Below, piece by piece: positions 2,283 to 63,082 of a stretch of 64,000 nt of DNA. The stretch's first letter is position 1. Each line of letters begins with the position of its first letter. A model generated the notes under the pieces. That model did no database searches. It saw only the letters and a program-made list of their open reading frames with translations, and was not told the DNA's origin. Origin of the DNA: Lytechinus pictus (lineage: Eukaryota); assembly GCF_037042905.1 (NCBI RefSeq), contig NC_087254.1:30566001-30630000 (forward strand). The letters are read 5' to 3'. The translations under genes were made by a program, and so were the position numbers.

Positions 2283-5200
2283 ATGGCAGGAGAAAATAAG
2301 GAAAATGTTGACGTCGATACTGAAGCAGAAATGGAAGAATTTGCAATGCATTTCGAGGCAAATCGTTTGGATTCATTTAAAGACTGGCCATTCCAAGAAG
2401 ATTGTTCATGTGTTCCACAAAAGGTAAGCAGCCAGTGCAAATGCACAGACGACTCGAATTTTCTACCGTATGCAGGCCGGTGCTCTCCCGCTAGCCGCTT
2501 GCAAGTTGAGGCACGGCCGCGCCGCGGAGTAGCTGCTCAGCTCCGGTGCGGTGACAGTCAGTCGGCTAGCCTAAAATACCAGGAATAACCTTCGTTTCTG
2601 GGGATTTATTAACAATTTCTGACATTTACTTTCATGTTTCAATTATATGATAAAAAGCTGTAATCCCATTAACATGATGGCATGCCAACATGATTAACAC
2701 CCTGGTAGTGGTAATGAAAACTGACATTGTGACAATGACAAAAATCAAAATGTCAAAAAATCAGGCATTTGTCCCCAGCCCAGGGCCAAGCTCAAGGCCC
2801 AAGGCCAAGCAGAAAAAGAGAAAATAAGCCAAACTTATGGTGGTGTGACCTTAATTCGCGCGTTACCTAATTTTGAGCAGAAAAAGCAACCCAAAATTAC
2901 TCAGTATTTGAGTATCATATCAGTACAGTATGGTAATTTTCTTGAAACAAGGTAAGCCTTCGTAAGGTCTCTCAAATTGTGAAAAACTGAAAATATTGGC
3001 AAAACATCGGCGAATTTTGTTACCTTTTGCGTCCGCTCCGAGAAAATCTGATCTTCTCGACAAGCATTAAGAAATCGCTAGTTTTAATTGCAAGCAGAGG
3101 TCTCCAAATAAATAAATAAAATGTGATACCAACCGAATTTATGGCATTTTAACCTAGGCTCTATCTGATTCTGATATCATTATCTTACCTTTGTTTGATT
3201 TCTTTTCTAAAGGCAAGCTTTGCAAAATGCAAAACGATCATGCGCAAATTAAGGTCACACTTTTTATGACACTTTTTAAGTTTTTCAGCCGAGCGCACAC
3301 TAGTCGATCACCATGGAATTTTTAGATTGCGATACGAGCGATAAAATTCCGTCAAGCAAATTTGACTTTGGGATCTTGCCTTCCGTCTGGTATTTATGAT
3401 TTTGATTAATTTTGTGTGAACTGTGAGAAATTTTTGATTGAGAATCAACTTCATGATGATTTTTAAAATGTGCGCAAATTTACTAGTACATGTACTTACT
3501 TCCAGTATACTAATAGTAATACTAACCTCGCAATATGTGTGAGTGACTTACTTCCAACATTGCCAACCTTACAGTATTTTCCCACACAGGAAGTAGATCT
3601 ACATGTACTGATCTACATACGTGTAGTAACAGAGAATAAGGATCATAACCTTGTTCATTGAATGAGTGCCCAAGACCATGCACGATATTCTAATAAAAAT
3701 CCAAATTTATTAAACTCAGTTTTTATAGGTCTAAGAAATACCTAGATCTGCAGAATATTAAGATGTAAAATTTTGCTGAATTAATTTTCTTAATTACAAA
3801 ATCAGCTCCCGATCGCACCCCTCTTCGACTTTGCACGTGAAATATTTTGGCCATTTGACTCTTGAAAATAGTATTGTACAAACTAATAACGTGTGTTTCC
3901 TGTGGGAAAAGTTGAGAAAACAACTGGCAACTGCCCCCACTAATGCTCTATCTTTACCATATTTTTATTTTTTGAGAATACAAAGAATTTGAGAGTGTGT
4001 TCTTGACCATTTAATAATTCAATTCAACTCAAGTTCCCTTCATGCCCTTTGAAAGGATGTTGCAAAGTTTGAGTGTATGAAATTTTATCTTGATGCGTGC
4101 GTTCGGTAATACAAGGCTGGTCGCTAATACAATAACTCACTATAGACCTTCTGGTTCTGTATAGGTTATACATGTAACTTTCAAACAAGTGAATGGATCT
4201 ATTCAAATGCATGATTTGTTTGACTTTGAGTCACATTACTAGTTAGTATTCAAGTTATCCATATTATCACTTATCATTTTGCACCAGTTTCGAGTCCCAT
4301 GATCAAGATCAAAGGGCATTGCCAATGAACTTACTATGAATGGTGTTTTATGAATTATAATAAAAATATGGTCAATAGAGTGCAGTGACACTTAGTAGTT
4401 GGTATATGTACATGTATCATATCATTACCCCCAGCTAGCAGCTGTAGCTGAGGCGCCATTTACATGTAAGCAGGGACGGATCCAGATTTCCAAAAGGGGG
4501 CACATTTTTGCGGGGGAAAATTTGACAAGCAACAAAAAAAATTTCTTTCAAAAGGGGGGGGGGGCACACTTATGTTTTAAAGGCATTTTTACATTAAAAA
4601 TTTCAATTGTGCCTCTCAAAGGGTACGGGCCAGCTTATAATATATATACATGTAAGGGCTATGTGGAGGCATCATGGTCTTGTGGTTACGACTCTCCTCT
4701 TTCAATCAGAGCGACGTGGGTTCGAATCCCGGTCATGACGTGTTTTCCTTCAGCAAGAACTTTACCCACATGGTGCTCATTAGGCCTGGGAGTAGCCATC
4801 GATTGATCGAATGGCTTGCCGCCGATCGCCAATCGATTAGCAAAATTTACACTAATCAAATGTTCAGCAGATCCCGATTATGACTTTGGGATAACTCGAA
4901 TACCCAAGTAATAATAACAAAAATGATCAATGATTGTATCACATTCACAGTTAATCACCGACCTGAAAGAGCTCCGAACATGTTAATCCCACCCGGCCTT
5001 GCCCTCGATACACAATATTGTCATTGCCTGCGTGCTCAAAACAGAAAGTAAACTCACAACCAGCTCACTTGAGCTGAATGGACCTTCGATAGCCAATGAA
5101 ACTTTTTGGGAAACAGAAGAAGCCACATGCGTTTCCTTATCAGGAAAGGTCATGACTTCAGAAATAAATTGACCCCTCCCCATCTGTGTGTGTGTGAGGG

Positions 5201-12575: not shown

Positions 12576-15500
12576 TCATGATCGTCCAGCTTTGACTGCA
12601 TCAATCTTCTTCTTCACACCAGCTAAATTCAGCGTGAGTTCTGCATGATGACGCTTTAGATACTCCATCCTGCCTCGTAATTCGTCTCCCTCGTCCTTTC
12701 TTTCTTCAAAGTCCTGGAGAAGGGATTTCTTACCCAAGAGGCCGCTCTTTTGCCGAAGACGTTGGTTGTCTATTCTCAGGCTGTCTCGTGCCTTCTTGGT
12801 TCTTGACAGGACATCACGTTTCTAAAGGAAGTTGATATAGAGAATTTGAGATTAACAAGAATGCACACGTTCAAAGTTTCTTTGGAATTTAAAATAAATG
12901 AACATCAAATTTGGTTTGCCATATTCAAGTTGTTCGTATTTAAAATCATGCATAACTTTATAAAAAGCTAATCAAACAGCCCCTACAAAACAAATCCTGT
13001 GCCCCATCTTATAAAGAGTGTGATTAATCCAATCAATCTTAATTTTGGAAAGAAAGCTGGTAATGCCATAATTTTTTGTCTATGCGTACACAATTATCCC
13101 CTTTTAACCCTAACCAGACTGGGCTTTTTGGGTGTTCTATGACTGGGGGGCTACCCCCCCATTTGAGATCTCGGCCATCAGGGAATGCTAATTTTTTATG
13201 CAAATATTCTTCATACTATTGCTAACAATTACAAATGAAAAAAATCCTGGTGTGAAAATGAATTTATTATGTAATTCATTGTTTTATGAATTTCTTATGT
13301 ATTTTTCTGTTTTTGGACCTAGCGTTTTTCTTTGTTTTTTTACCAAATTTATAGCAGAACCTTTTTAAAGCAAAATTATGCTAAAAATCAATTAATTTCA
13401 GCTAATAAAAGTAAAAATAATCAAATCTTTATGAATAAGGTGAGAAAATTCAGTTTATATTGACTTTGTACACAAAATCACGTCTTGGAGCAATTTTGGG
13501 TGCGACATGCACCGATGTAATGTTGCGTAATTATCGAACCGCATACCTTGGCATCATAAATTTGGTGTCAAAAGATGTGCAAGACTTCAAAGTAAAAAAT
13601 CAGTGAGCGGCGCAGTAAAAAAAAATTGCGCAGCCGAATGGTGAATCAAAACAATAACACACGAATTTGTCATATTTAGAGGGGCATAATTTTGAAGACA
13701 TGGAATTCTAGATGACGGGTCTCTGGCCTTCCATAGTTGAGATTGATAGAATCAATCACACTACCTTGAAAGATCATGCCCAGAAATTACCTGTGCCACC
13801 AGTTCTTCAACTTCTCTCAGCTTGCCTTTCTGAACATGGTTCTCAGCCTGAACAAACTGGAGCTTCTCCTTGACGTGGGTCAGCACCTGAACAGTACTAG
13901 TGATCTTCTTTCTCAATTTGAGTAATTCCTGTATGAAATGTACAGAGAAAAGCAATAAGACAATGAAGGCACTCTGGTGTAGTGGATCAGATTTGACTTA
14001 AGATTAGAGAGTCACAGGTTCAAATCTAGTTAGAACCTGATCTGTGATCTTTCTCAATTTAAGTAACTCCTGTATGAAACATGAAAAGATAAAGGCAATA
14101 AGACAATAAAGGCGCTCTGGTGTAGTGAATCAGATTTCACTTGAGGATTAGAGGGTCAGAGGTTCAAATCCTACCCATAGCCTATGGCTTTAGACAAAAT
14201 ATCCACATTTCCCTCAATGACTTGGGTAGAGTGAATGGGTATCTAGCAGGAAATAATGATTTCTTGAGATGCTTATGCATCACGATGACAACAAGATCCT
14301 TGAGCACTCTGCAGTGCGCTTGAAAAAGGCATCATTAAATTGTTCATGACGGGAAGACGGGTAAAGGATGGAAAGAAATCAGGAAGAGAGATATTGAGTT
14401 TGAGTTTATTTACTTAACAACAATAACAATGTGTTAACATCACAGCACAAACATAACTATTCTAGTATACAGATGTAATTGCTAACATTATAAAGGACAA
14501 AATGAGAATACAAACGATAAATCTGAATACATAAAATGTGACGTGCGTGTATAAACCTAAATCAAATGTTTTAACATTTTTTTAAGATCCCAGTCACAGT
14601 TTCCAATATTGATAATCTAACAAAAAGATATATATATGGTTGAATGTTGTTGTTAAGAAGGAACCAGAACAAGTGCTAGTCGAGACTGATTACTTCAAAT
14701 CTTTGGTATTTTTACATAAAAGAAATACGTGTGAACACTGAATAATACTATAAATGTTTAATTGAAAGGGATAGAAATAGAAAGGGGTGGGGTGGGAGTG
14801 AGAGAGTCTCCTATGTTTTACCTCATTCCTTTCTTCAATCTTCTCATTGTATGTCTGGTTCTCAATCTTCAACTGTTCAAAGTCAATCAGATGAAGACCT
14901 TCAGCAAGTTCCTCCTTGGCCTTGAGCTGTTGCTCTCTCTTCTTAAGACGGTTCTTGAGTTTGATGTTCTCCAGTCTTACTTGCTTCACCTCTTCCTCTT
15001 TCTTCAGCTCATTGTAGAGGTACACTTCCACTTCCTGTTGATTAAAAATAAACAAATGGATCAATAAAAAAAATCAAACAAAAATTGTGACCAATACCTT
15101 TGTTTTGATAAAAAATATAGCATGAATTCAGAGAGCCCTTGCAGTTCATGCTCAGTAGGGTAAGGCCATTTTGAGAATCCCCTTAGAATCACTGTTGGTA
15201 ACATGGAAATTTAGAGAGCAGCAAGGCGATTGAGGTGGCACCTAAGGCAATTGCCGCCTTCACCTCAGCTAACTGTAAGTCTTTTCAACAGTGGAACTTC
15301 AATTCTTCAGATATACATGGATGTTTAGCCTGATAAAAATGTGACCTTTGATATTGTGGTAACAGGGCTCTGCAGCAAATCACAATCAAGGTTTTCCATG
15401 GCAGTTACAATAACGAAATTACCATAGTTGTCAGTAATTATGATACAGGCCCCAGTTCAGTAAATACATTTAAATGCCTTAACTGGAATGTTGATTCACA

Positions 15501-18500
15501 CACAAAACAAGACAATCCTCACCCTTGGAGCTATGGGTTTCCCAGTCCTGCTGCTGATGGCCGTCAGGGCTACTTGTCTCTTGAGTTCTAAGAATTGTTG
15601 GTTCTCATTCTCAACATAGTCTTGCTTCTCCTGCTTTCGGTCTTTGAGCTCCTCAAGATTCAGGAAGGAGAGTTCTCTCTCCTCTTGTTCTTGTTTCCTT
15701 AGCTCATCCAAATTGGCTGAAAATGAAACAAAATGAAATAAGGAAGAAGCAATGGTAAACGCTCTTTCCTATCTGGCTTGGATAAACTCTGGCAATGCAA
15801 ACAGTTCTATGTACCATGACATCCATGCACACACACATCATTTACTAGTTGTGAATTAATACATTTTATGACTTTGTCAACAATCGAGAGATCTACAGGA
15901 TTACCTCATTCCCGTATACCAGATGATGATGATGATGACGTCATCTTTGTGGGTTATTTCTAATTTCAAATAATGCAAAGTTAGCATTGGGACTTTAGGT
16001 CTCAAATCACAAAAATATGCAGAAATTACCATTTTTATAATAACACCTCCTACAATTCTAATTTTGTTAATTCTCCTATGGTCTATAGTTACTCCGTCTG
16101 ACTACAATAAGGCCTTCAACAATCTAGCTGGTCTTCGTGTCACTTTGTCTATTTTCCATTTGATCTATATCTAAATCAGCTAATTTCAAAAGATCAATGT
16201 TCACTTTGTTGCCAACCAAATTCATCAAACTACTACTTCATCTAATTATAGTCTAATTCTTGAATCTAAATTCCCCCAAGGATATATGTATATCTCTGTT
16301 TGTCTTTCACCCCCCCCCCCCTCTCTCTCTCTTCAAGACTTACACATGTATTTGAGATATCTCTGCTCTTGATCTGTCACATTTTTGTCCATTTCTTGTC
16401 TCTGGTCATCTGTCTTCTTCTTACGGAAATATTCAGCAAGCTTATGTTGGAGTTGGATATTTTGTTGATTCAGTTGCTCACGCTCTGACACCATTGCCTT
16501 CAGATAATAAAGTTCAAATGAAGGTAATTAAGTTGAATTCATGAGCACAATTTTTGTATTATACTTCAAAGATATTTTAAATCCCAGTCATAATGTACTG
16601 ATTATCAAAGAGAAATCTACCTACAGCTTTCCCATTAAGTAATGTATTCCAGTATATACTGGAGATTATTATGCTGTTACAAAAATGTTATGTTGTTATA
16701 TGTAGTTCAATCAATTCTAAAAGTCCAAAGCATCATTTTTTTTTTCATTTTAAAAGTCCAAAGCATCATTTTTTAAAATTCATCTTAAAAGTTCAAAGCA
16801 TTGAAAATTGATTGCATGACATATAACACAACAATATTTTGAGAAGATGAAAGTTCCTTCAATCACAATCCACAAAATTTAAACCCCCAAAATACAAAAT
16901 AATATCACGTAGTATGCAAAAAATCACAGAACATTTCTGAAGGCAAACTGCCACTCTGTCTAATCCTTTTTTTTATTTGTCCAATATCAGTTACAACCAG
17001 TCTGTTTATTGATACCTATTTAATACCTGCTTAATTTTGAAAAAAAAAATCTTCATTTCCTTTTCTCATATTTTCAAGCCTCAATCCTATGTTTCTTTAA
17101 AATTTTCAAAAACATACCAACAATCATCTTTCTTACAAGTTAAAAAAAAAATCCTATTTCTGGGGGGAAAGTCCTATTTAGCATCACTTTCCCCATAACA
17201 ATCCTAAAAATTATAAAATCTTACTAATTAGCAGCTCTGCATTAGACATTGGGACATTTCAATTGGGATTTATCTTTTGTAAAAGAAGTGCCATTTGGAT
17301 ACTTGATATTGGACCAAGTTACTAATGTATTAATAGTAACCTGGATTTAACAACACAATCTGTGTTTCACAAAGATGTTAACTTTCCCAACACATGTGTA
17401 AGCGTCAATGTGCATATGACATTTGACACGTAATCTACCATGAATCCCCCAAGCATGATTTGACCAATGCAGTGATGTATCATATACCGCACACAACTGG
17501 GAATTTAAAGGGAAAAAAAGATAGCTTGTGTGGTAACAGAAAATCAAAGAAACAGATCAACGAAAGTTTGAGAAAACTTGAATGAATAATAAGAAAGTTA
17601 TGAGCATTTGAAGTTTAGATCATTATTGTAATGTAGATCCTCTCATTGGCAATGCAACAAAGATGTGTGATATCACATGTAAACACCTTTCCCATTGCTT
17701 TTGTATATATTTCACTTAAAATACCTCTTTTATCACATCAGTAGATCATGAATTATTTCTATAAGAGGGCTTGTAATACAGATTTTCAAAGAACATATTA
17801 TGGATAAAGAGTTTGTACCACCATAAGAGCACAAAGAGACGTTTTGGAGGTATTTTATAGTCCATCAAAGAGAAAGTTGTCTACATGTGACATCACACAT
17901 ATCTGTCGCATTGCCAATGGCAGGATCTCCATAGCATTAGTAATTGCAATATTCAAACGCTCATAACTTTCTCATCATTTGTCTGATTTTTCTCAAACTT
18001 TCTTTGATCTTATTCTTTGATTTTTCTTTTTCCACACAAGTCCACTTGTTTCAAGAGTTTCATTCCCCTTTAACAGTTACTCCTTGAATGTGAAACATCC
18101 CTTGGGAATTTAGACTAACTGGCATAATTGAATTGAATTGAATGTATTCATTGTCCTTAAATCCATTGCAGAAATCTCTAGCTATATAGTCACACATACA
18201 TACCTGATACATTTCTATAAGTTCTTCTCTTGATATTAGATCCTCTTCTTCTTCTTCAAGCAAAGCTTCTTCTTCTGGGAGAGGAGATACTGGAGTACAA
18301 GTAGGGCAGTAAAGAGAGCAAAATACAGTCAAGTATGACAAGGGAAAGATATTAACAAAGAATAAAGAGAGAAAGAGTAAAGCAGGGGGAAAATACAATT
18401 TCTTTTAAATGGGCAATTTTCCTGCTTGTGTTCACTCATATTTTTTTTAATTATATCCAGTGGTAAATTACATGGGTTATTTTGGACATTTGGAGGGCTA

Positions 18501-24029: not shown

Positions 24030-24051
24030 GTTGATTGCGTTGACCGTCTCT

Positions 24052-26915: not shown

Positions 26916-26964
26916 ATAACATTCAAATTAAGCATCAAGCTGAATAACATTCAAAAAGCTGACA

Positions 26965-41600: not shown

Positions 41601-42340
41601 TGTGAAACAGCTGTAAGTCTTCATACATGTATCTCACCATTGTCTCTTACTTGTATACAACATTTCTTTGTGTTTCTAATAGAAGTGCCCACTTGTAAAC
41701 AAGCTTTTGATTTTTAGTCGCTGATTGACATACATTTACAGATAAATTGGTAACTTTATATAAAAAAGTAAAATTAATGAATTTTTATAAATATGTGCAG
41801 TCCATGTTATAAAAAAAATAAAGTATTACAGCTAAGATTTTTATGTTTTACTGGGTGGCATTGGCTTCGCAGTGATTAATTGATTATGCAAAATATTTTG
41901 CAAAATCAAATATTTTCAACAGTAAATCTAAATAAATTGCTTTTTTTTCTTCTTCTTAGAAAAGATAGGCATTCACACATTAACATCTATTCCATAATAT
42001 AATCAATTTCAATGAAGCATTCATTTATATGGGCTGTCATTACATAGAAATCCCTGACAAATGTGTTCCTGTTGCTTGCTTAACATATGCTTTGTGCCAA
42101 GATGATTATTAATAATTTTCTAATTTTCTTTGTTTCAACCCTGTCCAGGTGGAGGTCATAGGGGGCGCTGACAAGTACATGGCCGTCTGCCGAGACTGTT
42201 ACTTACTCAGTCCAAGTAAGATCAATGATAACAGTATACAAACCCCCATCACGCTAGATACAACACACAAAGCTAATAAACAAGGGAGGCGATTATTCCA
42301 ATCTCCCAGCAGTGATGGAGAGTCAAGCATGTCCCCTTGA
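35668..42340 (+). CDS. TK1: Thymidine kinase 1 (cytosolic, type II), 235 aa
   Basis: Exons 35668-35733, 38411-38442, 39561-39674, 40019-40112, 40687-40776, 41493-41612, 42149-42340 (708 nt). Motifs [15 protein letters not shown] (P-loop), [24 protein letters not shown], Zn ligands CMHC and [13 protein letters not shown]. Confidence 0.97.
37643..38097. mobile_element. hAT-like MITE
   Basis: CAGGGC..ACACT / AGTGTCATGCTCTG termini and ACTGGTCC subterminal repeats. No clean TSD. Confidence 0.5.
38954..39501. mobile_element. Degenerate TTAA-target MITE
   Basis: AGGGAATCTAAC... / ...TTGGATTACCCT termini; internal motifs resemble the 17509 element. Confidence 0.5.
40968..41355. mobile_element. MITE with CAGGGTGCTACA TIR and 5-bp TSD
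   Basis: TIR CAGGGTGCTACA/TGTAGCACCCTG. CAAGT on both flanks (40963-67, 41356-60). Many CTTGCCC/GGGCAAG subterminal repeats. Confidence 0.85.
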
Positions 42341-51370: not shown

Positions 51371-51561
51371 AAAATAAAAATAAAGAAATTGAATTCATTC
51401 CTAACCTCACCCACATTCACAACTACCACAATCCTCAAACCAAAATCCCACAATCCTTTACCCAAATAATATGCTATTGACATATTAAGCCCTGATGAAT
51501 CCTTGCAAGAACAAATTCTGAAATCTGAATCACTTATAATCTTCCTCAACCTAACCACTCT

Positions 51562-54500
51562 TTATTTAAGTCCATTCTTGTCCAGCTTTTCTCCAATGAA
51601 TTTGAATTTCTTTAGAGCCATTTCAATATCTTTCTCTGTGACATGGTGATTCATGGCAGCTCGCAATGAGTTAGCAGTCTCTGGAAACAGCTTTACCTGG
51701 GAACATGAATCAAAGATAGTCAAAACTATTTTAATACCTTAAATAAATTAATATTACAGGTAAATGTTTATGAACCATTGATAACACATATTAATGGAAA
51801 CTGCTTCAAGCAATTAAGATGAGTTTGTTCTGGTTTATTTCATAAGATACAATTCTAAAATTAATAAGACTAAGAGAATAGTGTGTGTGTAATTGTGTTT
51901 TTTCAGACGTGTATGAATCAGATATCTAGAACTAACCTTTACCAACACCATCTCAAAGATACAAATCAGGGTTCAAATCTGGAATCTGAAACCCATGTAG
52001 CCTGAATCACAGGCAATCTGGAATCTGAAACCCATGTAGCCTGACTCACAGGCAATCTGGAATCTGAAACCCATATAGCCTGACTCACAGGCAATCTGGA
52101 ATCTGAAACCCATGTAGCCTGACTCACAGGCAATCTGGAATCTGAAACCCATGTAGCCTGACTCACAGGCAATCTGGAATCTGAAACCCATGTAGCCTGA
52201 CTCACAGGCAATCTGGAATCTGAAACCCATGTAGCCTGACTCACAGGCAATCTGGAATCTGAAACCCATATAGCCTGACTCACAGGCAATCTGGAATCTG
52301 AAACCCATATAGCCTGACTCACAGGCAATCTGGAATCTGAAACCCATGTAGCCTGACTCACAGGCAATCTGGAATCTGAAACCCATATAGCCTGACTCAC
52401 AGGCAATCTGGAATCTGAAACCCATATAGCCTGACTCACAGGCAATCTGGAATCTGAAACCCATGTAGCCTGACTCACAGGCAATCTGGAATCTGAAACC
52501 CATATAGCCTGACTCACAGGCAATCTGGAATCTGAAACCCATGTAGCCTGACTCACAGGCAATCTGGAATCTGAAACCCATATAGCCTGACTCACAGGCA
52601 ATCTGGAATCTGAAACCCATGTAGCCTGACTCACAGGCAATCTGGAATCTAAAACCCATGTAGCCTGACTCACAGGCAATCTGGAATCTGAAACCCATGT
52701 AGCCTGACTCACAGGCAATCTGGAATCTGAAACCCATATAGCCTGACTCACAGGCAATCTGGAATCTGAAACCCATGTAGCCTGACTCACAGGCAATCTG
52801 GAATCTGAAACCCATGTAGCCTGACTCACAGGCAATCTGGAATCTAAAACCCATGTAGCCTGACTCACAGGCAATCTGGAATGTGACACCCATATAGCCT
52901 GAAACCCAACATCAGCCAATTGGTATTGTACAACGCCTACTTAGCTTGTTGTACGCGAGCAAATGGGAGGCGGAATGTCAAACATTTGTACCGTTGCACA
53001 AAAGACGTACCATCCAGAATGTACCGTTGCACGGCTTTAGGAGGTGACGTCACAATACAATTTAATTCACTGCGCTCAGTGAAAATGAAGGTGCAATGCG
53101 CGTATAAGCCTGCTGGCTAAATGTGCAATGCTGCCAAAGGTCATACATGATGTGCGCTTGTGGGATTTTGCTTTCCACTTTCAGTATTTTTGCTCCCTTT
53201 TCATAGATTACTATAGGGATAAACTCTTGTTTTTTCATATTTTCGCTAAATTCCGAGGCGTTGTACAACACAAATAGCGAATATTCTTCGCGCAATTGTG
53301 CAAGATTTGGCATTTGGTGAAAGAAATAAAACGCTCTATTCATCTTGGCTAACGCCTCGTTGAATAGAGAATCTTTCTTTCACCTCATGCAAAATCTCGC
53401 ACCATCGCACTCATGCCTATTTGCTATTTGTATAATCTATGGTTTATGGACAACTTTGACATTAAGGAATATCATCGGGCACAGGTACAGCCGAGACAAT
53501 ATTTTGGAGAGGCCGACTGTTGTGCAATAACAAAAAGTCGGCCCCTGAAATGGTATTGTGTTCAACTTGGCTAGATCCGCCACTGAATATCATTGTCATA
53601 CCTGAATACTCTGACCAAGGGTAGCAATTTCATCATCAGCTACGTTTCCTAGGAGCTGAGCGGCTTGCATGGATGGAATGTCTTCTCGTATTAGAACATG
53701 TACCATATTTGTCTGTGTGTTCTCTGGGATGGATGTGAAGACTGGGTTACCCATCTCTTTTAGACCTGATTCAAAATGCACAAATTAAAGAAAATGGATA
53801 TTGTGACTAGGTTAGAACATTAATTAATCAATAAATAAATTACTTTTTTAAAAGAAGAGAAAAGTGCATTCACCCAACCATGGTTGTAAATAAAGTTAGA
53901 TAAAGACTTGTGGAGTGTTGCAAGAAACTTGCAATCGATTGCAAATCAAGTTTTTGTCTCCAAATCAATAATAAGTCTGGTAATTAATTGCAAATTTTTA
54001 ATTGATCACTGGTCTGCTTCGGTTTTCAAGTATAAAGTCATTTGCTTGATTTGATACTGATCTATCACTTGTAAATTTGCGATTGATTGCAAATATTTTC
54101 TTGCAACACCCCCTTAGGGGTGACAATAGTGACTGACAACCCCCCCCCCCCCCTGACTCTGAGAAACACACTTAAAAATAATACATATTTTATGACAACT
54201 TTCTTTAAATTTCTGGCTAAACACTAATTTCATGACATAAACATCTTAAAGCAGGCAGAGAGCATGCATGGTAATAAAAAGTAACCACTTTGAAATAATC
54301 TTTCTTATTTCATGTGACATATGCACAAAAAATTTCTCAATGCAAACTGGCCTATGTTGGCAACATACATGTGTAAACTTACCTTTGGATAGCTTTTGAG
54401 CATTTTTATGGTCGACATGGAGTCTTGCATATCCTTGATCTATGCCCACCAGAGCGGCAGCGGCAAGCACACCACACTGTCGCATACCTCCCCCTAAAGC

Positions 54501-57500
54501 TTTCCTGTGCCTCAAAGCTCTGGTGAAAGAAATTAATACCTATGTGTTACCAACCTGAGGTTATGCTGAAGATAATGAGGAATGGTTACACTGAATAACT
54601 GCAATGCAGCAACTAAGTTGCAAACAAACAGAAAATGGCCATGCCTTTGCAAGATTCATAAAGTTATGGGCCGATATATCCAAATTGAAATCCTGCTCAG
54701 AAATCTTCTTTTCATTGTCCTATGTGGTTGATGAAAGGTTTGAAATTAAATATTATTTGAAGGTTTAAGCTGAGGAAAGGGAGGTCATTAAGTGGTTAAT
54801 ATTCATTTTTTCTGTTGTGATACTTAGTTTCTTTACGGTACTGATCCACTGGTCCCCGCCAAAAATCACTGGCAAACATAGGTAAAAAAAAACTGTTATG
54901 ACACGGCTGTAGTGAATTTGTAAATAGAGTACCGAAGTGATGAAGTCACAAAAAAACTTTTTTTTTGCATTTCAGAATTTCTGATACCACATTTTGTTAG
55001 AGCATGATGAAATACCTCCACTACCGAATTTTGGTGCGAATCGGTCCATGGGGGCCTGAGATTTGACCCCATGAATACATAATTAGCCCCATTGAAGTCA
55101 ATGTATTATTGGCCTGGTTCTAAAAGTTAGGAACATTGACATGAGGTCATTATCTTAGGCCCCCATGGACCGATTCTCACCAAATTTTGGAAGTGGGGGT
55201 ATTTCATCATGCTCTACCAAAATATGGTATAAAAAATCCTGAAATGCAAAATCGGAAAATTGATGACGTCAAACTTCGGTACTCTGTAGTAAGGCACCTT
55301 GTCAAAAGTCACAGCCATGTCTTCCTGCAGAAATCCTGCAAGTAGATTTTCATTACAAACCATCACAGTTGCCATAGACAAGACAATGGGGACTGCAGGA
55401 AAGCTCCAATGAAAAGATGCATTATATCATCCTAATAGTGATTTATCCTGCTGAACGACGCATCACAGAATTTGGACAAGATGCTTAAAGGTCAAGTCCA
55501 CCCCAGGAAAATGCTGACTTGAATGAATAGAGAAAAATCAAACTAGCATAGTGCTGAAAATTTCATCAAAATCGGATGTAAAATAATAAAGTTATGACAT
55601 TTTAAAGTTTTGCTTATTTTTCACAAAACAGTGATATGCACAACTAGGTGACTCATACCCCTTTCATATTGCGCTTTTCCCCGGCAAAGTTCACCAGCGA
55701 AGGGGAAAGTGTCCAGTATGAAAGGTACACCGGAGAACTTTACCGGCAAAATTCTCAACCAACCTCTAGAGGTGGAGAACTTCGCCAGTGAAACAGCCAG
55801 TATGAAAGCAAACCGGAGAACTTCTCCTCCTTAATGACGTCAGATGTAATTTTTTCCTCCCCGAAATCCCCTGAACTGAGATTATGCGCGCTAGCTAGCT
55901 ATTATTTCCGCGGCTAAATGTAGAAGGCCACGCTTTATGAGCTATTCGATCATTCCATAGTTAAATACCCTCGAAAATACAGTTTTTTTTTTCTACTAAT
56001 GATATTTATTTTAAAAGCGTTAGTTTACATGCTAAAAATGTGCTGAAAATATCAAAATACTTTGATTCGTCTTTTGTTTTGCTTCTAATATTTCTAGAAT
56101 ATATATATATTTTATTTAACCTTTTTGTAATCGGTAAGAAGCAATGTTTACAATTTTCTTTTCGTTCGTTCTAATTCTGCAATCTGCATGGAAGTGCCGA
56201 GTAAGCTGAGCAGCAACTGCTGCTGAGAAGTGTTTACCAGCCGTCATCTCCAAAACTTCACTGAGAAAATTAATTAGGTATCTGCAATTAATAAGGAAAG
56301 AGTACGATTAAAATTAAAATTTTAAAAAAAACGTGCGCTTTCATTGACACCGGGTTTGCACTTATTCCCCCCGAGCAAATCACCCGTTGACTTTCGCCGG
56401 GGAAGAGATGTCAGTGCGAAAGGGTACATTTTTTTCTTCGCCTGGAAAGTGAGGAATGCGTGCCGGAGAAGTTCGCCGGGGAAAAATGAAGAGGCCAGTC
56501 TGAAAGGGGTATCAGTCGATGATGTCCATCACTCACTATTTCTTTTGTTTTTTATTGTTTGAATTATACAATATTTCATTTTTCATAGATTTGACAATAA
56601 AGACCAACTTGACTGATCCATATAGTATTAAACAATGCTTATTCCACATGTTCAGGAAGGAATTAATTGTTGTATCACTTGACAATGAGGAGAAAATAAG
56701 AATATTTCATATAATAAAATACAAAAGAAATAGTGAGTGGATGACATCATAGTCTCCTCATTTGCATACCAGCCAGGATGTGCATATAACTGTTTTGTGA
56801 AATTAAGCGAAACTTTAATATGTCATAACTTTCTTATTTTACATATGATTTTTGATGAAATTTTCAGTGTTATGCTTGTTGGATTTTTCTCTTTTTATCT
56901 CTTTATCTCTCTTTTAAGCATCCTATCCAGGCTGGAAAGTTAGTTGCTTATTTTCATCTGCATTCATAAATGATACAATATTTATTTTTTTCATAATATG
57001 ATATCCGTCATTAGAGCCATCCATGTTGTTAATACTAGTATGTAATCATTAGATTAGATTTTTGTAAGAACATACAATGAGACCTTTCCCTTTGAGGTAT
57101 TTCCCTTTCAGAGGCTTGGAATTTTTTTTTAAATGCACCAAACTTTTTACCATAATTAAAAGTAACATGAATATGGAAATAAATGAAAAAGAATATACAA
57201 AAGCGGTATGACCTTGTGCAAAAAAATATTGGATGTACCGGTAATTTGTGCTATGAGAATAGAAAAAATATTAGTAGGACCAAGAAAATTACCAACATTA
57301 ATTAGTGGATAGGCTATAAATATTGAGCTTTGCAATATTGCTTGGAATTTTGCATTCTGCAGACTATAAAAAGCAAGCTAAAAATTTTTTTTCTTTCTTC
57401 CATTTCCCCTCATTTTATTTATTTATTATTTTTTTGGTGTGTGTGGGGGGGGGGGGGGGATGCACAACTATGTTTCACCAGCAAAGCAGCCATCTTACAC

Positions 57501-60500
57501 AATAAAAGAAAGATTAGATAATCTCAGCGCTCTTAGTACTGACTTATGTTAGTAATACCCGTTAAGGATGCCTTCTAATGTTGGTCCACTGAGGTATAAT
57601 ATTTTGATATTTTATAACCATAATATCATAATACAATCTTATTATTTACTGGAGATGGGGACAATTTTATGATAGAGTAAATAAAGTAAAAATGATGTCT
57701 TCCCATGATAAAAGACAGAAGGTGGAGTCATTTTTATTCTCACATTTATGGTAACTATGCCATTGAATGTTAACTATCATGGAATCCTTAATTTTCATTG
57801 GCTGTTGGGATTGATTAACATAAAAGTTACTAAAGGTGCACACATGGTAATACATACAGCATTTTAATCAATAAAAGAGCAAGGTAGATTGAATGCTTGA
57901 GGCCGCACCGGAAATCGAACCCCAGATTTCCATGGTGTAATCAGGCACCATAGACCACTCGGCCAAGGCACCTGGTCTATAACATAGTAAGGTATCTTAA
58001 CTATCTTAAATGCAACTGTGACATGATGAAATTGTTATAATCTGATGATAGTTTGTACTAAATTAAGAACGACTTCCCAAAACAAAGTACAAATTCACAT
58101 TGATAATCAAGCACAATGGGTAAATAAATGAGCATAATATAATTTGTAAACAAATTTTAGGCATGACTCCCATGTATTGAAGATCGTATGCTCGATCTGT
58201 AATGAATATCATAAGTCAGAAAAAAAAATGGAACCAGTGGGATTCGAACCTGCCATCTACTGCTTGTCTGGCAGCGACTCAACCACCAGGATATTCTGGT
58301 TCACGGCTTAGTTTTGATGAACTGGAATTCAAATACCCTCAATCCTTTTCTTTCTGCCTCATTAATATGCAAATGCAGTCCGCAGTGGACAATAGATAGC
58401 AAATTTTGTTAATAGGAGGAAATTATAATTTGTAAACAAATAACATAATATACTTATTGTCTTAGACTTGATGAATTATCATCACACTTTTGATAATTAA
58501 ATCATTAATTATATGAGACATATTACAATGTTTTTTTTAATTTGCCCTTCAAACCAAACACAAGTGTTAAATTACAAGAACACAGTACAAAGACAATATA
58601 TACGGTTCCACAATGTTCTCACTTGGGCCCATTTTGCTTTAGGCTACACTTAAAACTTACCAACTTACACTTAACATTTCTCTTTAAATTGTTCACTGGT
58701 GATTCAAATATTTTTCAAACTTTTGATAAAAGACAGAGAAATACATGTAAGATCATTATCAAACTGATAAACTTGAAGAAAATCACATTTGTAATTTTGT
58801 ATAGTGATAATGAAACAATAGCAATCATTTGCAATACATTACATATGTTTTTTCAATCACACTTATTGAAATGAATAGGAAAAGTGCAGCATCTTAACAC
58901 TGATCAGGCACCTTAAAAGCACTACCTGAAATATTTGCAAATTAAAAATTTTAACACATTAATTAGTACATGATTCATCAAAATTAAAAAAGATAATGCC
59001 TTGTTTCATAAAATGCATAGATCATAGATTTAAGAATTTGTTATGTGCATGTTTTGAATCTTCCCTTGTCTTAACCATTTAATGTCAGATCATTATGCCT
59101 CTGCCATCACCACAATTTTCTACTTAAATTCTGAAAATTGTGGTATTTAACCATAACAATGGAAACAAAACAAATCGAGCCATTTCAAAACCTTTTCATA
59201 GAAAATACACTCATGAAATCATACACGCAATATGATATGATTCCTTTATGTACAAGCCTCTTACCTCCAAGGATTTGCATACTCTGGACTATCAGTTTTA
59301 TTGCTTGTTTTTTTTTTTTTTTTTTTTTTTTTAGATATGAAGGTGATAGAATTCATAACATCATCTTGTATTCAGTCATTGATGATATGCTTAATGAAAC
59401 AGTGTTCTACCCCTCTGGGTTAATTATAAGTGGGAAAGATACTCACCTTGCGATTAAGTCATTAGATCCTATAAGGGCAGACCCCACTGGACAGCCAAGT
59501 CCCTAATAAATATAGAGAGTGGGTATGTTTTTAACGAGAATACAAATACAGACAATAACAATTTCATTTGTCCTCCTTCCCTTCTTTTCTACATGTATTT
59601 TCTATTAAACAATGCCAGTTATCGTCATTCTTTTCTACAGCTAACAAATTTATTATTCATTGTGTTGAGAGGAGTAAATACAAGGGTTACTTTTTCTACT
59701 ACAATTTTGGATCCTAGTTCACATCTGTTGCATTAAGCTCTTTCAAAGCATGTTCAAGAGGAAAATTAAATTATGATGTAAATTCGAGGATGAAAGCTAA
59801 TTTAGAGTTCAAGAAATTCTGTGTAGTTTAACGTTAAACAGATACCAATAAGTACCAATAGGTTGACGATTAATTTTATAATTCAGCATCTCAAATCATT
59901 TCAACATCACAAAGATTATGATTATAGTATAAGGGGGGGGGGGGCTGTCTGCGCATCTGTAATCTATCCTAAGATTACACATTCATTTCTACAATATTAT
60001 ACATAACTTTCAGACAATTTTGTTTGTTATATTCTGAAAAGTATCCCCAAAACCTCATAAAAAATTGACCAAAATATATATCTTGCAAAAGAAAAAAAAG
60101 CCTGTCATTTCTAAACTGGAGTTTTCCACACTATTCAAGGGTTTAAATGAGAAAGGCTGAATTATGAGGTCTTCGCATAAAATGCCTGAAATTTTCCAGT
60201 TTTGTTGTTTAATATAGCAAGCCTGCTATGATTAGATTCATGAAGATAAGGGGCACTGCATATAGGTCACCACACCATACTTGCACAAAGAAAGAGTTGG
60301 TATTGTTACCTTTGAGAAGCAGAGACTGATAGAGTCAACATACTGGGTGATGACATCAGGGGTAACATCCATAGCAACGGCTGCGTTAAGAAGACGAGCA
60401 CCGTCTAAATGAACCTTTAGATTATGCTTATCTGCTATAGCTCTCACCTAGATTGAATCAACCAAATAATGATGGCATTTATACATGCAACAAATAAAGT

Positions 60501-63082
60501 CTATCCAAAGCTGAATTAGATTGATGAAATGAATTTACATGAGCTACTAAGAAGTTTTAGGTATTTACACTAGGAGGTTTTCAACAGATCTTCAACCCTT
60601 AAATACAAACCCTCTTTTATCAATATTTTGTGACTCTATTCTCTCTGTCTCTTTCCGATTGTCATATTGGTTACATTTGATTGATTTTTACTAGTCAGTA
60701 ACTGATTTAGCCCTGAATAGACGAAGTACTTTGGATGAAAATACCAATATTTCAGCTGTTGATCACTACATCACAACAAAAATCAGCATGCACTTCAACC
60801 ACAACATATTCTACAAAATTTTAGAATTGATTGCTCAAAATGACTGGTTATTCAAAAATACAGCAATCACTATTTTATGCACAAAATTATAATTTCGCTG
60901 TAAATCTTGAAATAAAGCTCCTCAACTGCATACGTGATACATGTATATCACTGCTCGACATACAATTTAGGGGAAAATCAAGGTTAAAAACTAATCTGCA
61001 TTTTTTGTGAGGAAATGGATAGAACTTTGAGTTGATGATCAGAATACCTTCTTTAAGAACTCCAGAGGGAGCACTCTGCCTCCTGTTGCATTATGGGTGT
61101 TTTCGATGCAGATGAGTTTGGTGGTGGCCATGTGAACATCACTAGGTCGTATCTTGGACTCTAGTTCCTCCAAGTCTAGAGTTCCATCTGGTAAGGTCTT
61201 GACTGTGTGTGGGCACACACCAGCAAACTGACATTATACAGAAAATTTATGACATTTTCAAGCTTCAAGTCTGGTTATTTTCAATTCAACTCTACTTAAT
61301 TTGACAACATATTAGAGAAATCATTACACAGTATAAAGAACCAAATCACTAATAGAAGAGGCAAATATCACATTTTCCATAATCTGGTCTGTAAAATTGC
61401 TAAATAGGAGAGGTCAAATAATGCTGATTGCTGACTCAAATGTATGCTTCAATGAACGTTATTAACACTGCATCATTGTCAAAATAAAGTGTAATGCCTC
61501 AAAGGACTGTTTTAAATATTTTCACTATCACTATCATTCATCTTCATCATCATCATCACCATCATTAATCCTTATCATCATCACTATCATCATCATCATA
61601 ATCATCATCATCACCATCATCGTAATCATCATCATTATCATCACCACACTCCATAATCATCATCACCATCATCATCAACATCATCATCATCATCGTCGTC
61701 ACCAACACTATCAATGTCATCATCATCATCAGAATCATAATCATCAATATCATCATCATCTTCATCAAAACATTATCAGTATTATCAGCAGAGGCAACAG
61801 CGGCAGCAGCAGCATCATTACTACTACTACTACCACTACTGCTTCTAATATAATTATTGTTCATTATTATAATCATCAGCAGAAATAGCATGATGATCAA
61901 TATAATCATTTACATCAGTATTATAAATGTCATAATCACTATTCTCATCATTATCAGCATTACTTTTGACATAGGGAGTAGTGACAATGAGCTCTATTTT
62001 CTTACCTGGGCCATACCACCCTGTTCCCATGTAAAGATGTGACACTTGTCTCCTAGCAATATCTCCTCACCTCGACCAGTACAATGACCCATCACTGTAA
62101 AAATAAAGAAATAAATCATTATTAATATTCTAAACATTTTTGTAAGAATCGTTTAACTTCTATCCAGAAATCTACCTTTTAAAAGTAAGATTATACATAA
62201 GCCACAGAGAGAAAAGTCAAAATGTATATCAAAGGACAAGTCCACCACAACAAACTAAATAAAAAGTGAAAAATCCAACAGGCATAACACTGAAAATTTC
62301 TTAAAAATCGGATGTAAAATAAGAGAGTTTTATGACATTTTTAAGTTTCGCTTAATTTCACAAAACAGTTATATTCACATCCTGGTTGGTATGCAAATGA
62401 GGGGACTGATGACATCACTCACTCACTATTTCTTTTGTATTTCATATGAAATACACCCATTTTCTCTTGGTTGTCCTGTGAACAAAGTTTTATTCCTCCC
62501 TGAACATGTGGTATTACCATTGTTTTAACATTATATGGTTCAGACAAGTTGGTTCTTATTGTCAAATCTGTAAAAATTGAAATATTGTATAATTCAAACA
62601 ATAAAAAAACCAAAAGAAATTGTGAATGAGGGACATCATCGAATCTTTCATTTGCATGTCACTGAGTTGTGCATATAACTGTTTGGTGAAAAATAAGCGA
62701 AACTTTAAAATGTCATGACTTACTTATTTCACATCCGATTTTGATGAAATTTTCAGCATAATGCTTGTTTGATTTTTCTCTATTGATTAAAATCAAAATT
62801 TTTCTGTTGTGGATTTGACCTTTAAATTTTTTTCTACAATCTTTCATTTCTCCAAATTTAGACATTTTCGACATTGATTCAAATCGCATTTGTCATATAT
62901 GTGATACATATAATTTGATTCTTTTCTCTAATTTATATAGAATAATTTCATCTCTAAAGCTGCAAATAAAAATTAACTTATACAAGAAATTACTTTACCT
63001 GCAATCAAATTGGACATTGTCCCTGTTGGAACAAAGAGGGCAGCATCCTTCTTCATCATTTTGGCCACTTTGTTTTGTAGCT
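51562..63082 (-). CDS. THA1: Low-specificity L-threonine aldolase (PLP-dependent, GLY1/Tha1 family), 5'-partial
   Basis: Exons (minus) 63082-62999, 62094-62006, 61227-61048, 60447-60310, 59502-59447, 54519-54383, 53765-53602, 51696-51562; phases consistent. Motifs ALFVPTGTMSNLIA, HIFTWEQGG, ICIENTHN, VHLDGARLLNA, SLCFSK|GLGCPVGS (PLP lysine), RKALGGGMRQ, TNMV. The N-terminal exons (DLRSDT motif) are not in the window. Confidence 0.94.
51976..52902. repeat. 39-bp minisatellite, ~24 copies
   Basis: Unit AATCTGGAATCTGAAACCCAT[G/A]TAGCCTGACTCACAGGC, almost invariant, in the last THA1 intron. Confidence 0.97.
52926..53436. mobile_element. Non-autonomous element with split inverted repeats and a large 3' hairpin (Crypton-like architecture)
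   Basis: TTGTACAACGCCT (52926) is inverted internally at 53256-68. ACAAATAGC.. (53270) pairs with ..GCTATTTGT (~53431). Hairpin centre CTCTATTCA-TCTTGGCTAACGCCTCGT-TGAATAGAG. Confidence 0.6.
54926..55285. mobile_element. Palindromic MITE
   Basis: AGAGTACCGAAGT.. / ..ACTTCGGTACTCT, with long internal arms (GAGCATGATGAAATACC / GGTATTTCATCATGCTC). Confidence 0.75.
55489..56900. mobile_element. TTAA-target (Kolobok-like) MITE hosting a Harbinger-type MITE; right end truncated
   Basis: TTAA|AGGTCAAGTCCACCCC; collinear with the 62233 and 25617 copies. Confidence 0.7.
55656..56511. mobile_element. PIF/Harbinger-type MITE, 856 bp
   Basis: TIR TACCCCTTTCA/TGAAAGGGGTA; 3-bp TSD TCA (55653-55, 56512-14); CCGGAGAACTT subterminal repeats. 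Confidence 0.85.
57899..58291 (-). pseudogene. Two degenerate tRNA-like sequences (tRNA pseudogenes or SINE heads)
   Basis: 57972-57899: TGGCCGAGTGG A box and GGTTCGATTTCC B box. 58291-58230: GGTTCGAATCCC B box. The acceptor and anticodon stems do not pair properly. Confidence 0.5.
61520..61960. repeat. Degenerate (CAT/ATC)n trinucleotide microsatellite
   Basis: Long ATC/CAT/ACT/GCA runs in a THA1 intron. Confidence 0.9.
62233..62821. mobile_element. TTAA-target (Kolobok-like) MITE, uninterrupted copy
   Basis: AGGACAAGTCCAC...GTGGATTTGACCT|TTAA; same family as 25617 and 55489. Confidence 0.8.

What the first reader, a model, noticed from the sequence alone, without database searches (positions are those of the whole stretch)
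2283..63082. BIRC5-TK1-THA1 cluster: possible deep microsynteny shared with mammals
Seen: survivin, TK1 and threonine aldolase lie within 61 kb. Recalled knowledge: mouse chr11 and human 17q25.3 carry Tk1-Afmid-Birc5-Tmem235-Tha1 (THA1P, a pseudogene in human) as immediate neighbours. Inference: three unrelated genes have stayed tightly linked between this invertebrate and mammals, despite changed order and orientation and an intervening CCDC96. This could reflect a co-regulated proliferation block (dTTP salvage, mitotic CPC, glycine supply).
Basis: partly seen in the sequence, partly recalled or inferred. Interest (0 to 1): 0.75.

Follow-up and report, generated by a model that had tools for sequence, protein, structure and literature searches.

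The report
Ancient survivin–CCDC96–TK1–threonine aldolase gene block
This sea urchin keeps survivin, thymidine kinase 1 and threonine aldolase side by side as mammals do, but the oldest part of the block is a back-to-back pair of TK1 and the cilium gene CCDC96, found from sponge to sea urchin; it is one more case of a known kind of conserved gene neighbourhood.

Summary
The window (a Lytechinus-like sea urchin, chromosome C10) carries survivin/BIRC5(+), CCDC96(-), a young BEL/Pao LTR retrotransposon, TK1(+) and threonine aldolase THA1(-). THA1 runs off the 3' end of the window. TK1 and THA1 have one locus each in the genome, survivin is the only BIR gene outside the IAP loci on C4, and the TK1 tree follows the species tree.

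The linkage is older than chance allows. Sea star has LITAF-BIRC5-CCDC96-TK1. Acorn worm has CCDC96-TK1-THA1-CLEC16A. Sea anemone, a sponge and a spider have a CCDC96-family gene head-to-head with TK1, 0-0.5 kb apart by annotation in sponge, spider, sea star and acorn worm. Other human 17q25.3 orthologues (CANT1, ENGASE, RPTOR) are on the same urchin chromosome but 8-14 Mb away, so this block is far tighter than the rest of the shared linkage group.

The "intervening" CCDC96 is the core of the block. AFMID and SYNGR2 are not nearby. BIRC5 or THA1 next to TK1 was seen only in deuterostomes. The "proliferation block" idea is untested and sits badly with a cilium gene at the centre.

Verdict: new member of a known kind, a conserved ancestral microsyntenic block. 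Moderate interest.

The parts
2283..9261 (+). Survivin/BIRC5 gene, 4 coding exons (2283-2423, 6767-6877, 7842-7958, 9181-9261)
   Evidence: tblastn of the L. variegatus BIRC5-like protein P0001 covers residues 1-149. The BIR exon hits human survivin at E 1e-14 and Pfam BIR. Exon positions are shared with Acanthaster and Lottia.
12576..21138 (-). CCDC96 (CFAP184) gene, tail-to-tail with survivin. Conserved exons: 12576-12821, 13788-13934, 14819-15073, 15514-15723, 16339-16515, 18183-18239, 18792-19097. Acidic low-complexity N-terminal exon candidates reach about 21.1 kb; the true 5' end was not determined.
   Evidence: Pfam PF13870. The PDB hit to human CCDC96 is E 8e-16, against 1e-8 for CCDC113. 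tblastx shows 72-92% identity to the Acanthaster and Saccoglossus neighbours of TK1. The paralogue CCDC113 is on C2.
25764..33808 (+). BEL/Pao LTR retrotransposon inserted between the 5' ends of CCDC96 and TK1. LTRs are 25764-26876 (with about 560 extra bases) and 33261-33808, 98-100% identical.
   Evidence: Direct repeats. DUF1759, Peptidase_A17, Integrase_H2C2 and DUF5641 in the two long ORFs.
35490..35503 (.). E2F consensus (complement of TTTGGCGC) directly followed by TTTGAA (CHR-like), 178 bp upstream of the TK1 start codon. This is the only strict E2F consensus in the 64-kb window.
   Evidence: Motif scan. Sites at similar positions occur in Saccoglossus, spider, lamprey and Oscarella. 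This is a motif match only; function is not shown.
35668..42340 (+). Thymidine kinase 1 gene, 7 coding exons (35668-35733, 38408-38443, 39562-39675, 40017-40112, 40687-40776, 41493-41612, 42146-42340)
   Evidence: Pfam TK, the only locus in the genome. tblastn of Diadema, Acanthaster and Saccoglossus TK1. Best PDB hits are human TK1. Sister to Diadema TK1 in the tree with 100/98 support.
51565..64000 (-). L-threonine aldolase (THA1/GLY1) gene, tail-to-tail with TK1. Exons: about 51565-51699, 53599-53775, 54375-54531, 59446-59502, 60307-60447, 61045-61234, 62003-62092, 62976-63060. The 5' exon(s) lie at 63979-64149 and beyond, outside the window.
   Evidence: Pfam Beta_elim_lyase, the only locus in the genome. 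tblastx to the Saccoglossus gene next to TK1. PDB threonine aldolases. Exon translations.

Best explanation
The three genes are true single-copy orthologues. They sit in a remnant of an ancient animal gene neighbourhood, reconstructed here as (LITAF)-BIRC5> <CCDC96 TK1> <THA1 CLEC16A>.

The core is the divergent (5'-5') pair CCDC96-TK1. Its two starts are 0-0.5 kb apart by annotation in a sponge, a spider, an acorn worm and a sea star. I infer that it is held together by a shared, E2F-bearing bidirectional promoter region.

BIRC5 (tail-to-tail with CCDC96) and THA1 (tail-to-tail with TK1, head-to-head with CLEC16A) were attached at least in the ambulacrarian ancestor and, given mammals, most likely in the deuterostome ancestor. 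They persist because the block is compact and offers few harmless breakpoints.

In vertebrates the multi-exon CCDC96 left the locus. Human CCDC96 is intronless and lies elsewhere, which suggests retrogene replacement. AFMID now occupies the head-to-head position at TK1, local inversions changed orientations, and BIRC5, TK1 and THA1 stayed together at 17q25.3.

In this urchin a young LTR retrotransposon has pushed CCDC96 and TK1 apart without breaking the order.

Shown: gene identities, single-locus status, the neighbourhoods in nine other species, and the scatter of other 17q25.3 orthologues. Inferred: the shared promoter, selection against breakpoints, and the vertebrate history.
For: - Gene identity and copy number.
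- Acanthaster: LITAF-like(-), BIRC5(+), CCDC96(-), TK1(+) on one scaffold within 25 kb, with a CCDC96-TK1 gap of 346 bp.
- Saccoglossus: CCDC96(-), 186 bp, TK1(+), THA1(-), 951 bp, CLEC16A(+).
- Nematostella: CCDC96(-), TK1(+).
- Oscarella: CLEC16A ... CCDC96(-), TK1(+) abutting.
- Spider: a PF13870 gene(-), 519 bp, TK1(+).
- L. variegatus is collinear over ALKBH5-BIRC5-CCDC96.
- The urchin's CLEC16A lies about 42 kb beyond THA1 on the same strand layout as in Saccoglossus.
- CANT1, ENGASE and RPTOR are single-locus on C10 at 22.4, 19.7 and 16.3 Mb, while the block is at 30.6 Mb. Macrosynteny is therefore kept but scrambled, and this block is the exception.
- Mammalian order: PMC555945.
- Fugu: CANT1-AFMID(-), TK1(+), SYNGR.
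- AFMID is listed with TK1 among RB/E2F-pathway targets in human, as expected for a shared promoter (PMC9090780).
- An E2F consensus lies next to the TK1 start in 6 of 9 species, against a background of 0.1 per kb.
- Enrichment of 5'-5' pairs with short spacers among conserved pairs is a known pattern (PMC3514665).
Against: - No amphioxus, tunicate, annelid or bivalve TK1 locus could be examined, and only 10 kb on each side was visible in any other species. Absence of BIRC5 or THA1 near TK1 outside deuterostomes is therefore weak, and so is the dating.
- In Lottia, BIRC5 has no TK1, THA1 or CCDC96 within 10 kb. In Xenia, TK1 faces a PDPK1-like kinase. In lamprey, no partner is annotated within 10 kb. 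In fugu, BIRC5 is not within 10 kb of TK1.
- In this urchin the two 5' ends are at least 14.5 kb apart, so a shared promoter cannot be essential here.
- The spider partner could not be firmly assigned to CCDC96 rather than CCDC113.
- The human positions of CCDC96, GID4, ALKBH5 and the 16p13/17q25 paralogy rest partly on my memory.
Confidence: 0.62

Rival explanations
1. Neutral inertia. The block is ancestral, as above, but no constraint holds it. It simply has not yet been hit by a rearrangement in slowly rearranging lineages, and it has decayed where expected (Lottia, Xenia, teleosts).
For: - The block is broken in several lineages.
- An 8-kb transposon sits in the CCDC96-TK1 spacer here without apparent harm.
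- Orientations differ between mammals and urchin.
- Humans lost THA1 function altogether.
Against: - Other 17q25.3 neighbours have drifted 8-14 Mb apart on the same chromosome.
- The CCDC96-TK1 pair survives with the same 5'-5' orientation in five phyla, with spacers under 0.6 kb in four species. That is the signature reported for constrained pairs.
Confidence: 0.2
2. One reading: selection keeps TK1, survivin and threonine aldolase together as a co-regulated proliferation module (dTTP salvage, chromosomal passenger complex, glycine supply).
For: - TK1 and BIRC5 are both cell-cycle genes controlled through E2F/CHR-DREAM sites in mammals (PMC9090780).
- An E2F+CHR-like motif lies upstream of the urchin TK1.
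Against: - The gene most faithfully linked to TK1 is an axonemal protein (PMC7987202), not a proliferation gene.
- Survivin and TK1 are separated by CCDC96 and point the same way here, but differ in mammals.
- No strict E2F consensus lies upstream of the urchin survivin.
- THA1 is a pseudogene in humans and low-expressed in mouse.
- BIRC5 is unlinked within 10 kb in Lottia and fugu.
- Co-expression was not tested.
Confidence: 0.1
3. Coincidence. The urchin/ambulacrarian cluster and the mammalian cluster arose independently by random shuffling within one conserved linkage group.
For: - All the genes belong to the same macrosyntenic chromosome, so chance proximity is possible.
- My rough look-elsewhere estimate is about 0.2 chance triplets per genome.
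- No chordate invertebrate could be checked.
Against: - The probability for a given triplet is about 8e-6.
- The same neighbours recur in sea star and acorn worm.
- Further flank genes (LITAF, CLEC16A) recur in a mollusc and a sponge.
- Their human orthologues sit together next to SOCS1 at 16p13.13 (PMC4657880), while THA1 sits next to SOCS3. That is the pattern expected if one ancestral region was split by genome duplication.
Confidence: 0.07

Closest known systems
Conserved ancestral microsyntenic pairs (CAMPs) of Irimia et al. 2012 (PMC3514665), e.g. the HSPE1-HSPD1 bidirectional pair
   Same: Unrelated genes kept adjacent across phyla for more than 600 My. The core pair is 5'-5' with a very short spacer in most species, which is the class those authors attribute to shared promoters.
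   Different: The core pair CCDC96-TK1 is not adjacent in vertebrates, so human-anchored surveys would miss it. I could not check whether it or BIRC5-TK1 is in their lists, because no supplement is held. No main text in the library links CCDC96 and TK1.
Mammalian 17q25.3 / mouse chr11 E2 cluster SYNGR2-TK1-AFMID-BIRC5-TMEM235-THA1-SOCS3 (Edgar 2005, PMC555945)
   Same: BIRC5, TK1 and THA1 lie within a few genes of each other. TK1 has a head-to-head partner.
   Different: AFMID, SYNGR2, TMEM235 and SOCS are absent from the urchin block. CCDC96 and CLEC16A are present instead. Gene order and orientations differ.
P4HB-ARHGDIA conserved microsynteny, also at human 17q25.3 (PMC5722932)
   Same: Another pair of unrelated genes from the same human region, reported as conserved neighbours (title and abstract seen).
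   Different: Different genes. That study proposes a functional interaction of the products, and nothing of the kind is indicated here.
Retrogene replacement, e.g. amphioxus SYCP1 (PMC5803294)
   Same: A multi-exon parental gene is lost from its ancestral neighbourhood while an intronless copy works elsewhere. This is what I infer for vertebrate CCDC96.
   Different: Not demonstrated here. It rests on the multi-exon invertebrate gene, on CCDC96 being discussed in a preprint on human intronless genes, and on my memory of its position at 4p16.

Membership tests
Conserved ancestral microsyntenic block (CAMP-type) | The genes are unrelated (not tandem paralogues) | tested here: met
   Distinct Pfam families: BIR, CCDC113_CCDC96_CC, TK, Beta_elim_lyase
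Conserved ancestral microsyntenic block (CAMP-type) | Orthologues adjacent in several deeply diverged lineages | tested here: met
   CCDC96-TK1 in sponge, sea anemone, spider (family level), acorn worm, sea star and urchin. BIRC5-CCDC96 in echinoderms. TK1-THA1 in urchin and acorn worm. Mammals from PMC555945.
Conserved ancestral microsyntenic block (CAMP-type) | One-to-one orthology of the linked genes | tested here: met
   Single loci in the genome. CCDC96 is distinguished from CCDC113. The TK1 tree follows the species tree. No trees were made for THA1 or survivin.
Conserved ancestral microsyntenic block (CAMP-type) | Tighter than expected within the shared linkage group | tested here: met
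   CANT1, ENGASE and RPTOR are 8-14 Mb away on the same 37-Mb chromosome. The triplet probability is about 8e-6. No formal genome-wide permutation was run.
Bidirectional-promoter gene pair | 5'-5' orientation with a spacer under about 1 kb | tested here: inconclusive
   Met in Saccoglossus (186 bp), Acanthaster (346 bp), Oscarella (abutting) and spider (519 bp), by annotation. Not met in this window: at least 14.5 kb, including an 8-kb retrotransposon.
Bidirectional-promoter gene pair | Both genes driven by the shared spacer, or co-expressed | not tested
Only motif matches are available.
Genomic regulatory block (developmental gene plus bystanders) | Contains a developmental regulator whose enhancers lie in or beyond the neighbours | tested here: not met
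   None of the block's genes is a developmental transcription factor or signalling gene. Conserved non-coding elements were not searched.
Mammalian TK1-AFMID-BIRC5-THA1 cluster | AFMID head-to-head with TK1, and SYNGR2 on the other side | tested here: not met
   No Abhydrolase_3 match on C10. The only MARVEL match on C10 is at 8.26 Mb. Fugu, as a control, shows AFMID-TK1-SYNGR.
Survivin (BIRC5) | Single BIR domain with Cys/His zinc ligands plus a C-terminal helix, about 140-150 aa | tested here: met
   The four exons give a 149-aa product matching the named L. variegatus protein. The C..C...H...C pattern is visible in exons 2-3. Survivin is the best PDB hit.
TK1-type thymidine kinase | P-loop, DEGQF motif and two Cys pairs of the zinc lasso region | tested here: met
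   [20 protein letters not shown] and CRDC are visible in the exon translations. Pfam TK. Human TK1 in the PDB.
L-threonine aldolase (PLP, Beta_elim_lyase) | Domain along the whole length, with the PLP-binding lysine | tested here: inconclusive
   Pfam positions 1-285 are covered exon by exon. A lysine ends the exon before the GLG..VGS exon, as expected for the Schiff-base site. The start codon lies outside the window and was not found.
CCDC96 / CFAP184 | Closer to CCDC96 than to its paralogue CCDC113 | tested here: met
   61 bits to human CCDC96 against 38 bits to CCDC113. A separate CCDC113-like locus lies on C2.

The most novel reading that the evidence does not exclude
The CCDC96-TK1 divergent pair is a pan-metazoan regulatory unit. 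One E2F-bound bidirectional promoter serves an S-phase salvage enzyme in cycling cells and a motile-cilium protein in ciliating cells. E2F4/5 with multicilin drive ciliogenesis in vertebrates (my knowledge), so the pair could be a hard-wired link between the divide-or-ciliate decision of animal cells. The whole LITAF-BIRC5-CCDC96-TK1-THA1-CLEC16A block would then be its regulatory domain, split between human 17q25.3 and 16p13.13 by the vertebrate genome duplications.
Probability: 0.1. Interest if true: 0.7.

Novelty: new member of a known kind. Interest (0 to 1): 0.45.

Why it matters
This is a clean, checkable case of deep microsynteny: a four- to six-gene block of unrelated housekeeping genes whose core pair is shared by sponges, cnidarians, an arthropod and ambulacrarians.

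It also shows how such a block is remodelled in vertebrates. One member leaves, probably as a retrocopy. Another gene (AFMID) takes over the head-to-head slot at TK1. The flanks are apparently divided between two paralogous human regions.

It gives a concrete promoter for testing whether bidirectional promoters really hold gene pairs together, including a natural experiment: an 8-kb transposon now splits the pair in this urchin.

It does not change the general picture, since hundreds of such pairs are already catalogued.

Tried and rejected
There is therefore no expression, transcription-start or splice evidence. Those places were sent to no search tool afterwards; local scripts that read the whole window still included them.

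2. Lists of conserved pairs. No supplements are held for Irimia 2012 or Simakov 2013. The seven held supplement files of Robert et al. 2022 do not mention BIRC5, TK1, THA1, AFMID or CCDC96.

3. AFMID and SYNGR2 in the flanks: not found. No SH2/SOCS-like motif lies within 40 kb left or 60 kb right of the window.

4. An RFX X-box in the CCDC96-TK1 spacers: no match in any species.

5. Spider partner gene. Exon pieces gave no decisive CCDC96 or CCDC113 hit. There is one weak match to an urchin CCDC96 exon, E 0.002.

6. Gigantopelta (snail) TK1 is not on record for context, so there is no mollusc TK1 locus. No amphioxus TK1 or survivin was among the listed homologues.

7. The exon-piece protein search found only the L. 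variegatus protein, because of the length filter.

8. The bacterial-type promoter/terminator scan is irrelevant to a eukaryote and is ignored.

9. Earlier findings of the scan: nothing near the window or by words.

10. The FoxQ2 synteny paper that mentions survivin has no bearing on this finding.
Full report
WHAT IS IN THE WINDOW

The window is G000:C10:30566001-30630000 of an 812-Mb assembly, and C10 is 37.18 Mb long. Its DNA is about 88% identical and collinear to Lytechinus variegatus over 20 kb. Its survivin exons match the L. variegatus BIRC5-like protein at 95-100% per exon. It is therefore a congeneric sea urchin.

From left to right the window holds:
- Survivin/BIRC5 (+, 2283-9261, 4 exons).
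- CCDC96 (-, 12576 to about 21.1 kb, 5' end not fixed).
- A BEL/Pao LTR retrotransposon (25764-33808) with 98-100% identical LTRs.
- TK1 (+, 35668-42340, 7 exons).
- Threonine aldolase THA1 (-, from about 51565), whose 5' exons lie at 63979-64149 and beyond, past the window end.

These calls support the layout: 2, 3, 4-6, 11, 52-54, 77.

ORTHOLOGY

- Pfam TK and Beta_elim_lyase each match one locus in the whole genome.
- The only BIR match outside the multi-BIR IAP loci on C4 is the survivin exon.
- Survivin exon 2 hits human survivin at E 1e-14, against 6e-7 or worse for other IAPs.
- The TK1 exon hits human TK1 best. The THA1 exon hits threonine aldolases.
- The coiled-coil gene scores 61 bits to human CCDC96 against 38 bits to CCDC113. 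A separate CCDC113-like locus lies on C2.
- A maximum-likelihood TK1 tree of 23 sequences places the window's protein with Diadema (100/98) inside echinoderms and recovers separate echinoderm, hemichordate and vertebrate clades.
- A lineage-specific paralogue is therefore unlikely for any of the genes. I made no trees for THA1 or survivin.

NEIGHBOURHOODS ELSEWHERE

I looked at 10 kb on each side of the gene, using annotation plus my own tblastn and tblastx.

| Species | Arrangement |
|---|---|
| L. variegatus | a 447-aa gene (collinear with this genome's ALKBH5), BIRC5, a 599-aa gene (tblastn: CCDC96) |
| Acanthaster (sea star) | LITAF-like(-), BIRC5(+), CCDC96(-), TK1(+) within 25 kb of one scaffold; CCDC96-TK1 gap 346 bp; no THA1 in the next 10 kb |
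| Saccoglossus (acorn worm) | CCDC96(-), 186 bp, TK1(+), 2.2 kb, THA1(-), 951 bp, CLEC16A(+) |
| Nematostella | CCDC96(-), TK1(+) |
| Oscarella (sponge) | CLEC16A, GRAM, Forkhead, adh_short, CCDC96(-), TK1(+) abutting |
| Spider Oedothorax | a PF13870-family gene(-), 519 bp, TK1(+); subfamily unresolved |
| Lottia | LITAF-like(-), BIRC5(+), an unrelated 1223-aa gene; no TK1, THA1 or CCDC96 |
| Xenia (octocoral) | a PDPK1-like kinase faces TK1 |
| Lamprey | no annotated partner within 10 kb |
| Fugu | CANT1(-), AFMID(-), TK1(+), SYNGR(-) |

For mammals, mouse Tha1 lies between Birc5 and Socs3, and the human pseudogene has SYNGR2, BIRC5 and TK1 as near neighbours (PMC555945).

THE REST OF THE URCHIN CHROMOSOME

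- CLEC16A (FPL domain, exons 75-86% identical to the Oscarella gene) starts about 42 kb beyond THA1, on the + strand, as in Saccoglossus.
- Upstream of survivin lie ALKBH5 (PDB E 1e-33) and GID4 (PF09783).
- LITAF-like genes are 1.1 Mb and 14.5 Mb away.
- CANT1, ENGASE and RPTOR, which by my memory lie within about 1-2.5 Mb of TK1 in human, are each single-locus on C10 but at 22.4, 19.7 and 16.3 Mb.
- The chromosome is therefore macrosyntenic with human 17q25.3 but scrambled at the megabase scale, and the BIRC5-TK1-THA1 block is an exception.
- Three given genes placed at random on 37.18 Mb fall within 62 kb with probability about 8e-6. Allowing for all mammalian neighbour triplets, I estimate about 0.2 chance cases per genome. 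That alone is suggestive, and it becomes convincing with the replication in sea star and acorn worm.

INTERPRETATION

- BIRC5 and THA1 were joined to it at least in the ambulacrarian ancestor. The simplest reading of the mammalian cluster is that they were already joined in the deuterostome ancestor.
- LITAF next to BIRC5 in sea star and limpet, and CLEC16A near the block in sponge, acorn worm and urchin, suggest a still larger old neighbourhood.
- Human CLEC16A, SOCS1 and LITAF lie within about 0.5 Mb at 16p13.13 (PMC4657880), and THA1 lies next to SOCS3. This fits one ancestral region divided between two paralogous regions after the vertebrate genome duplications. That last step rests partly on my memory of 16p13/17q25 paralogy and was not tested.
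- The invertebrate CCDC96 is multi-exon. Human CCDC96 is discussed in a preprint on human intronless genes and, by my memory, lies at 4p16. Retrogene replacement would explain its departure.
- In vertebrates AFMID holds the head-to-head slot at TK1 and is listed with TK1 among RB/E2F-pathway targets (PMC9090780). That is what a promoter active in both directions would produce.

MECHANISM

- For the core pair I favour a shared bidirectional promoter region. The orientation is conserved and the spacers are 0-0.5 kb in four species, which is the signature reported for constrained pairs (PMC3514665).
- A strict E2F consensus lies within about 130 bp upstream to 80 bp downstream of the annotated TK1 start in Saccoglossus, spider, lamprey and Oscarella. 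In the urchin it lies 178 bp upstream of the ATG.
- In the urchin it is the only such site in 64 kb and is followed directly by TTTGAA. The background rate is 0.1 per kb.
- These are motif matches only.
- The flanking genes may persist because the compact tail-to-tail and head-to-head packing leaves few harmless breakpoints. That is inference.

Against any strict constraint:
- The pair is at least 14.5 kb apart in this urchin because of a young retrotransposon.
- The block is broken in Lottia, Xenia and teleosts.

It sits badly with several facts:
- An axonemal gene lies at the centre (PMC7987202).
- Orientations have changed between lineages.
- Humans have lost THA1 function.
- No E2F consensus lies upstream of the urchin survivin.

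NOVELTY

Conserved microsyntenic pairs of unrelated genes number in the hundreds, so this is a new member of a known kind. I found no main text linking CCDC96 with TK1 and no description of a BIRC5-TK1-THA1 block outside vertebrates. The supplementary lists of the systematic surveys were not available, so prior listing cannot be excluded.

LIMITS

- No cephalochordate, tunicate, annelid or bivalve TK1 locus was examined.
Those places were sent to no search tool afterwards.
- The true 5' ends of CCDC96 and THA1 were not determined.

Noticed in passing
window 25764-33808: Full-length BEL/Pao LTR retrotransposon with two long intact ORFs (928 and 881 aa) and 98-100% identical LTRs. The left LTR carries about 560 extra bases (26016-26576). 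It is a young insertion between the 5' ends of CCDC96 and TK1.
   Followed up: partly
left flank, G000:C10:30552451-30561900 (L033, L034): GID4 (PF09783, - strand) and ALKBH5 (PDB E 1e-33, + strand) lie directly upstream of survivin, about 5 kb apart. By my memory both human genes are at 17p11.2, about 150 kb apart, so this may be a second small conserved linkage.
   Followed up: partly
L017:1-14154 (Acanthaster) and L018:1899-11302 (Lottia): A zf-LITAF-like gene lies head-to-head with survivin, about 8 kb away, in both a sea star and a limpet. In this urchin the nearest LITAF-like gene is 1.13 Mb away (C10:29.43 Mb).
   Followed up: partly
right flank, G000:C10:30672400-30688548 (L029, L030): CLEC16A (+) lies about 42 kb beyond the 5' end of THA1. 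THA1 and CLEC16A are head-to-head, 951 bp apart, in Saccoglossus, and CLEC16A lies 7 kb from TK1 in the sponge Oscarella.
   Followed up: partly
window 35490-35503: The only strict E2F consensus in the window is followed directly by TTTGAA, 178 bp upstream of the TK1 ATG. E2F consensus sites lie at comparable positions next to TK1 in acorn worm, spider, lamprey and sponge.
   Followed up: partly
window 51966-52919: About 950 bp of tandem 39-bp units, read as 13-aa repeats in two frames of the - strand, sits inside a THA1 intron.
   Followed up: no
window 7429-7674, 19983-20258, 4656-4880: Several copies of a short interspersed repeat share a tRNA-like stretch (translated motif ...[21 protein letters not shown]...). 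One copy lies among the 5' exons of CCDC96.
   Followed up: no
L024:1-9528 (Xenia): In the octocoral Xenia, the gene head-to-head with TK1 is a PDPK1-like protein kinase rather than CCDC96.
   Followed up: partly
   Followed up: no
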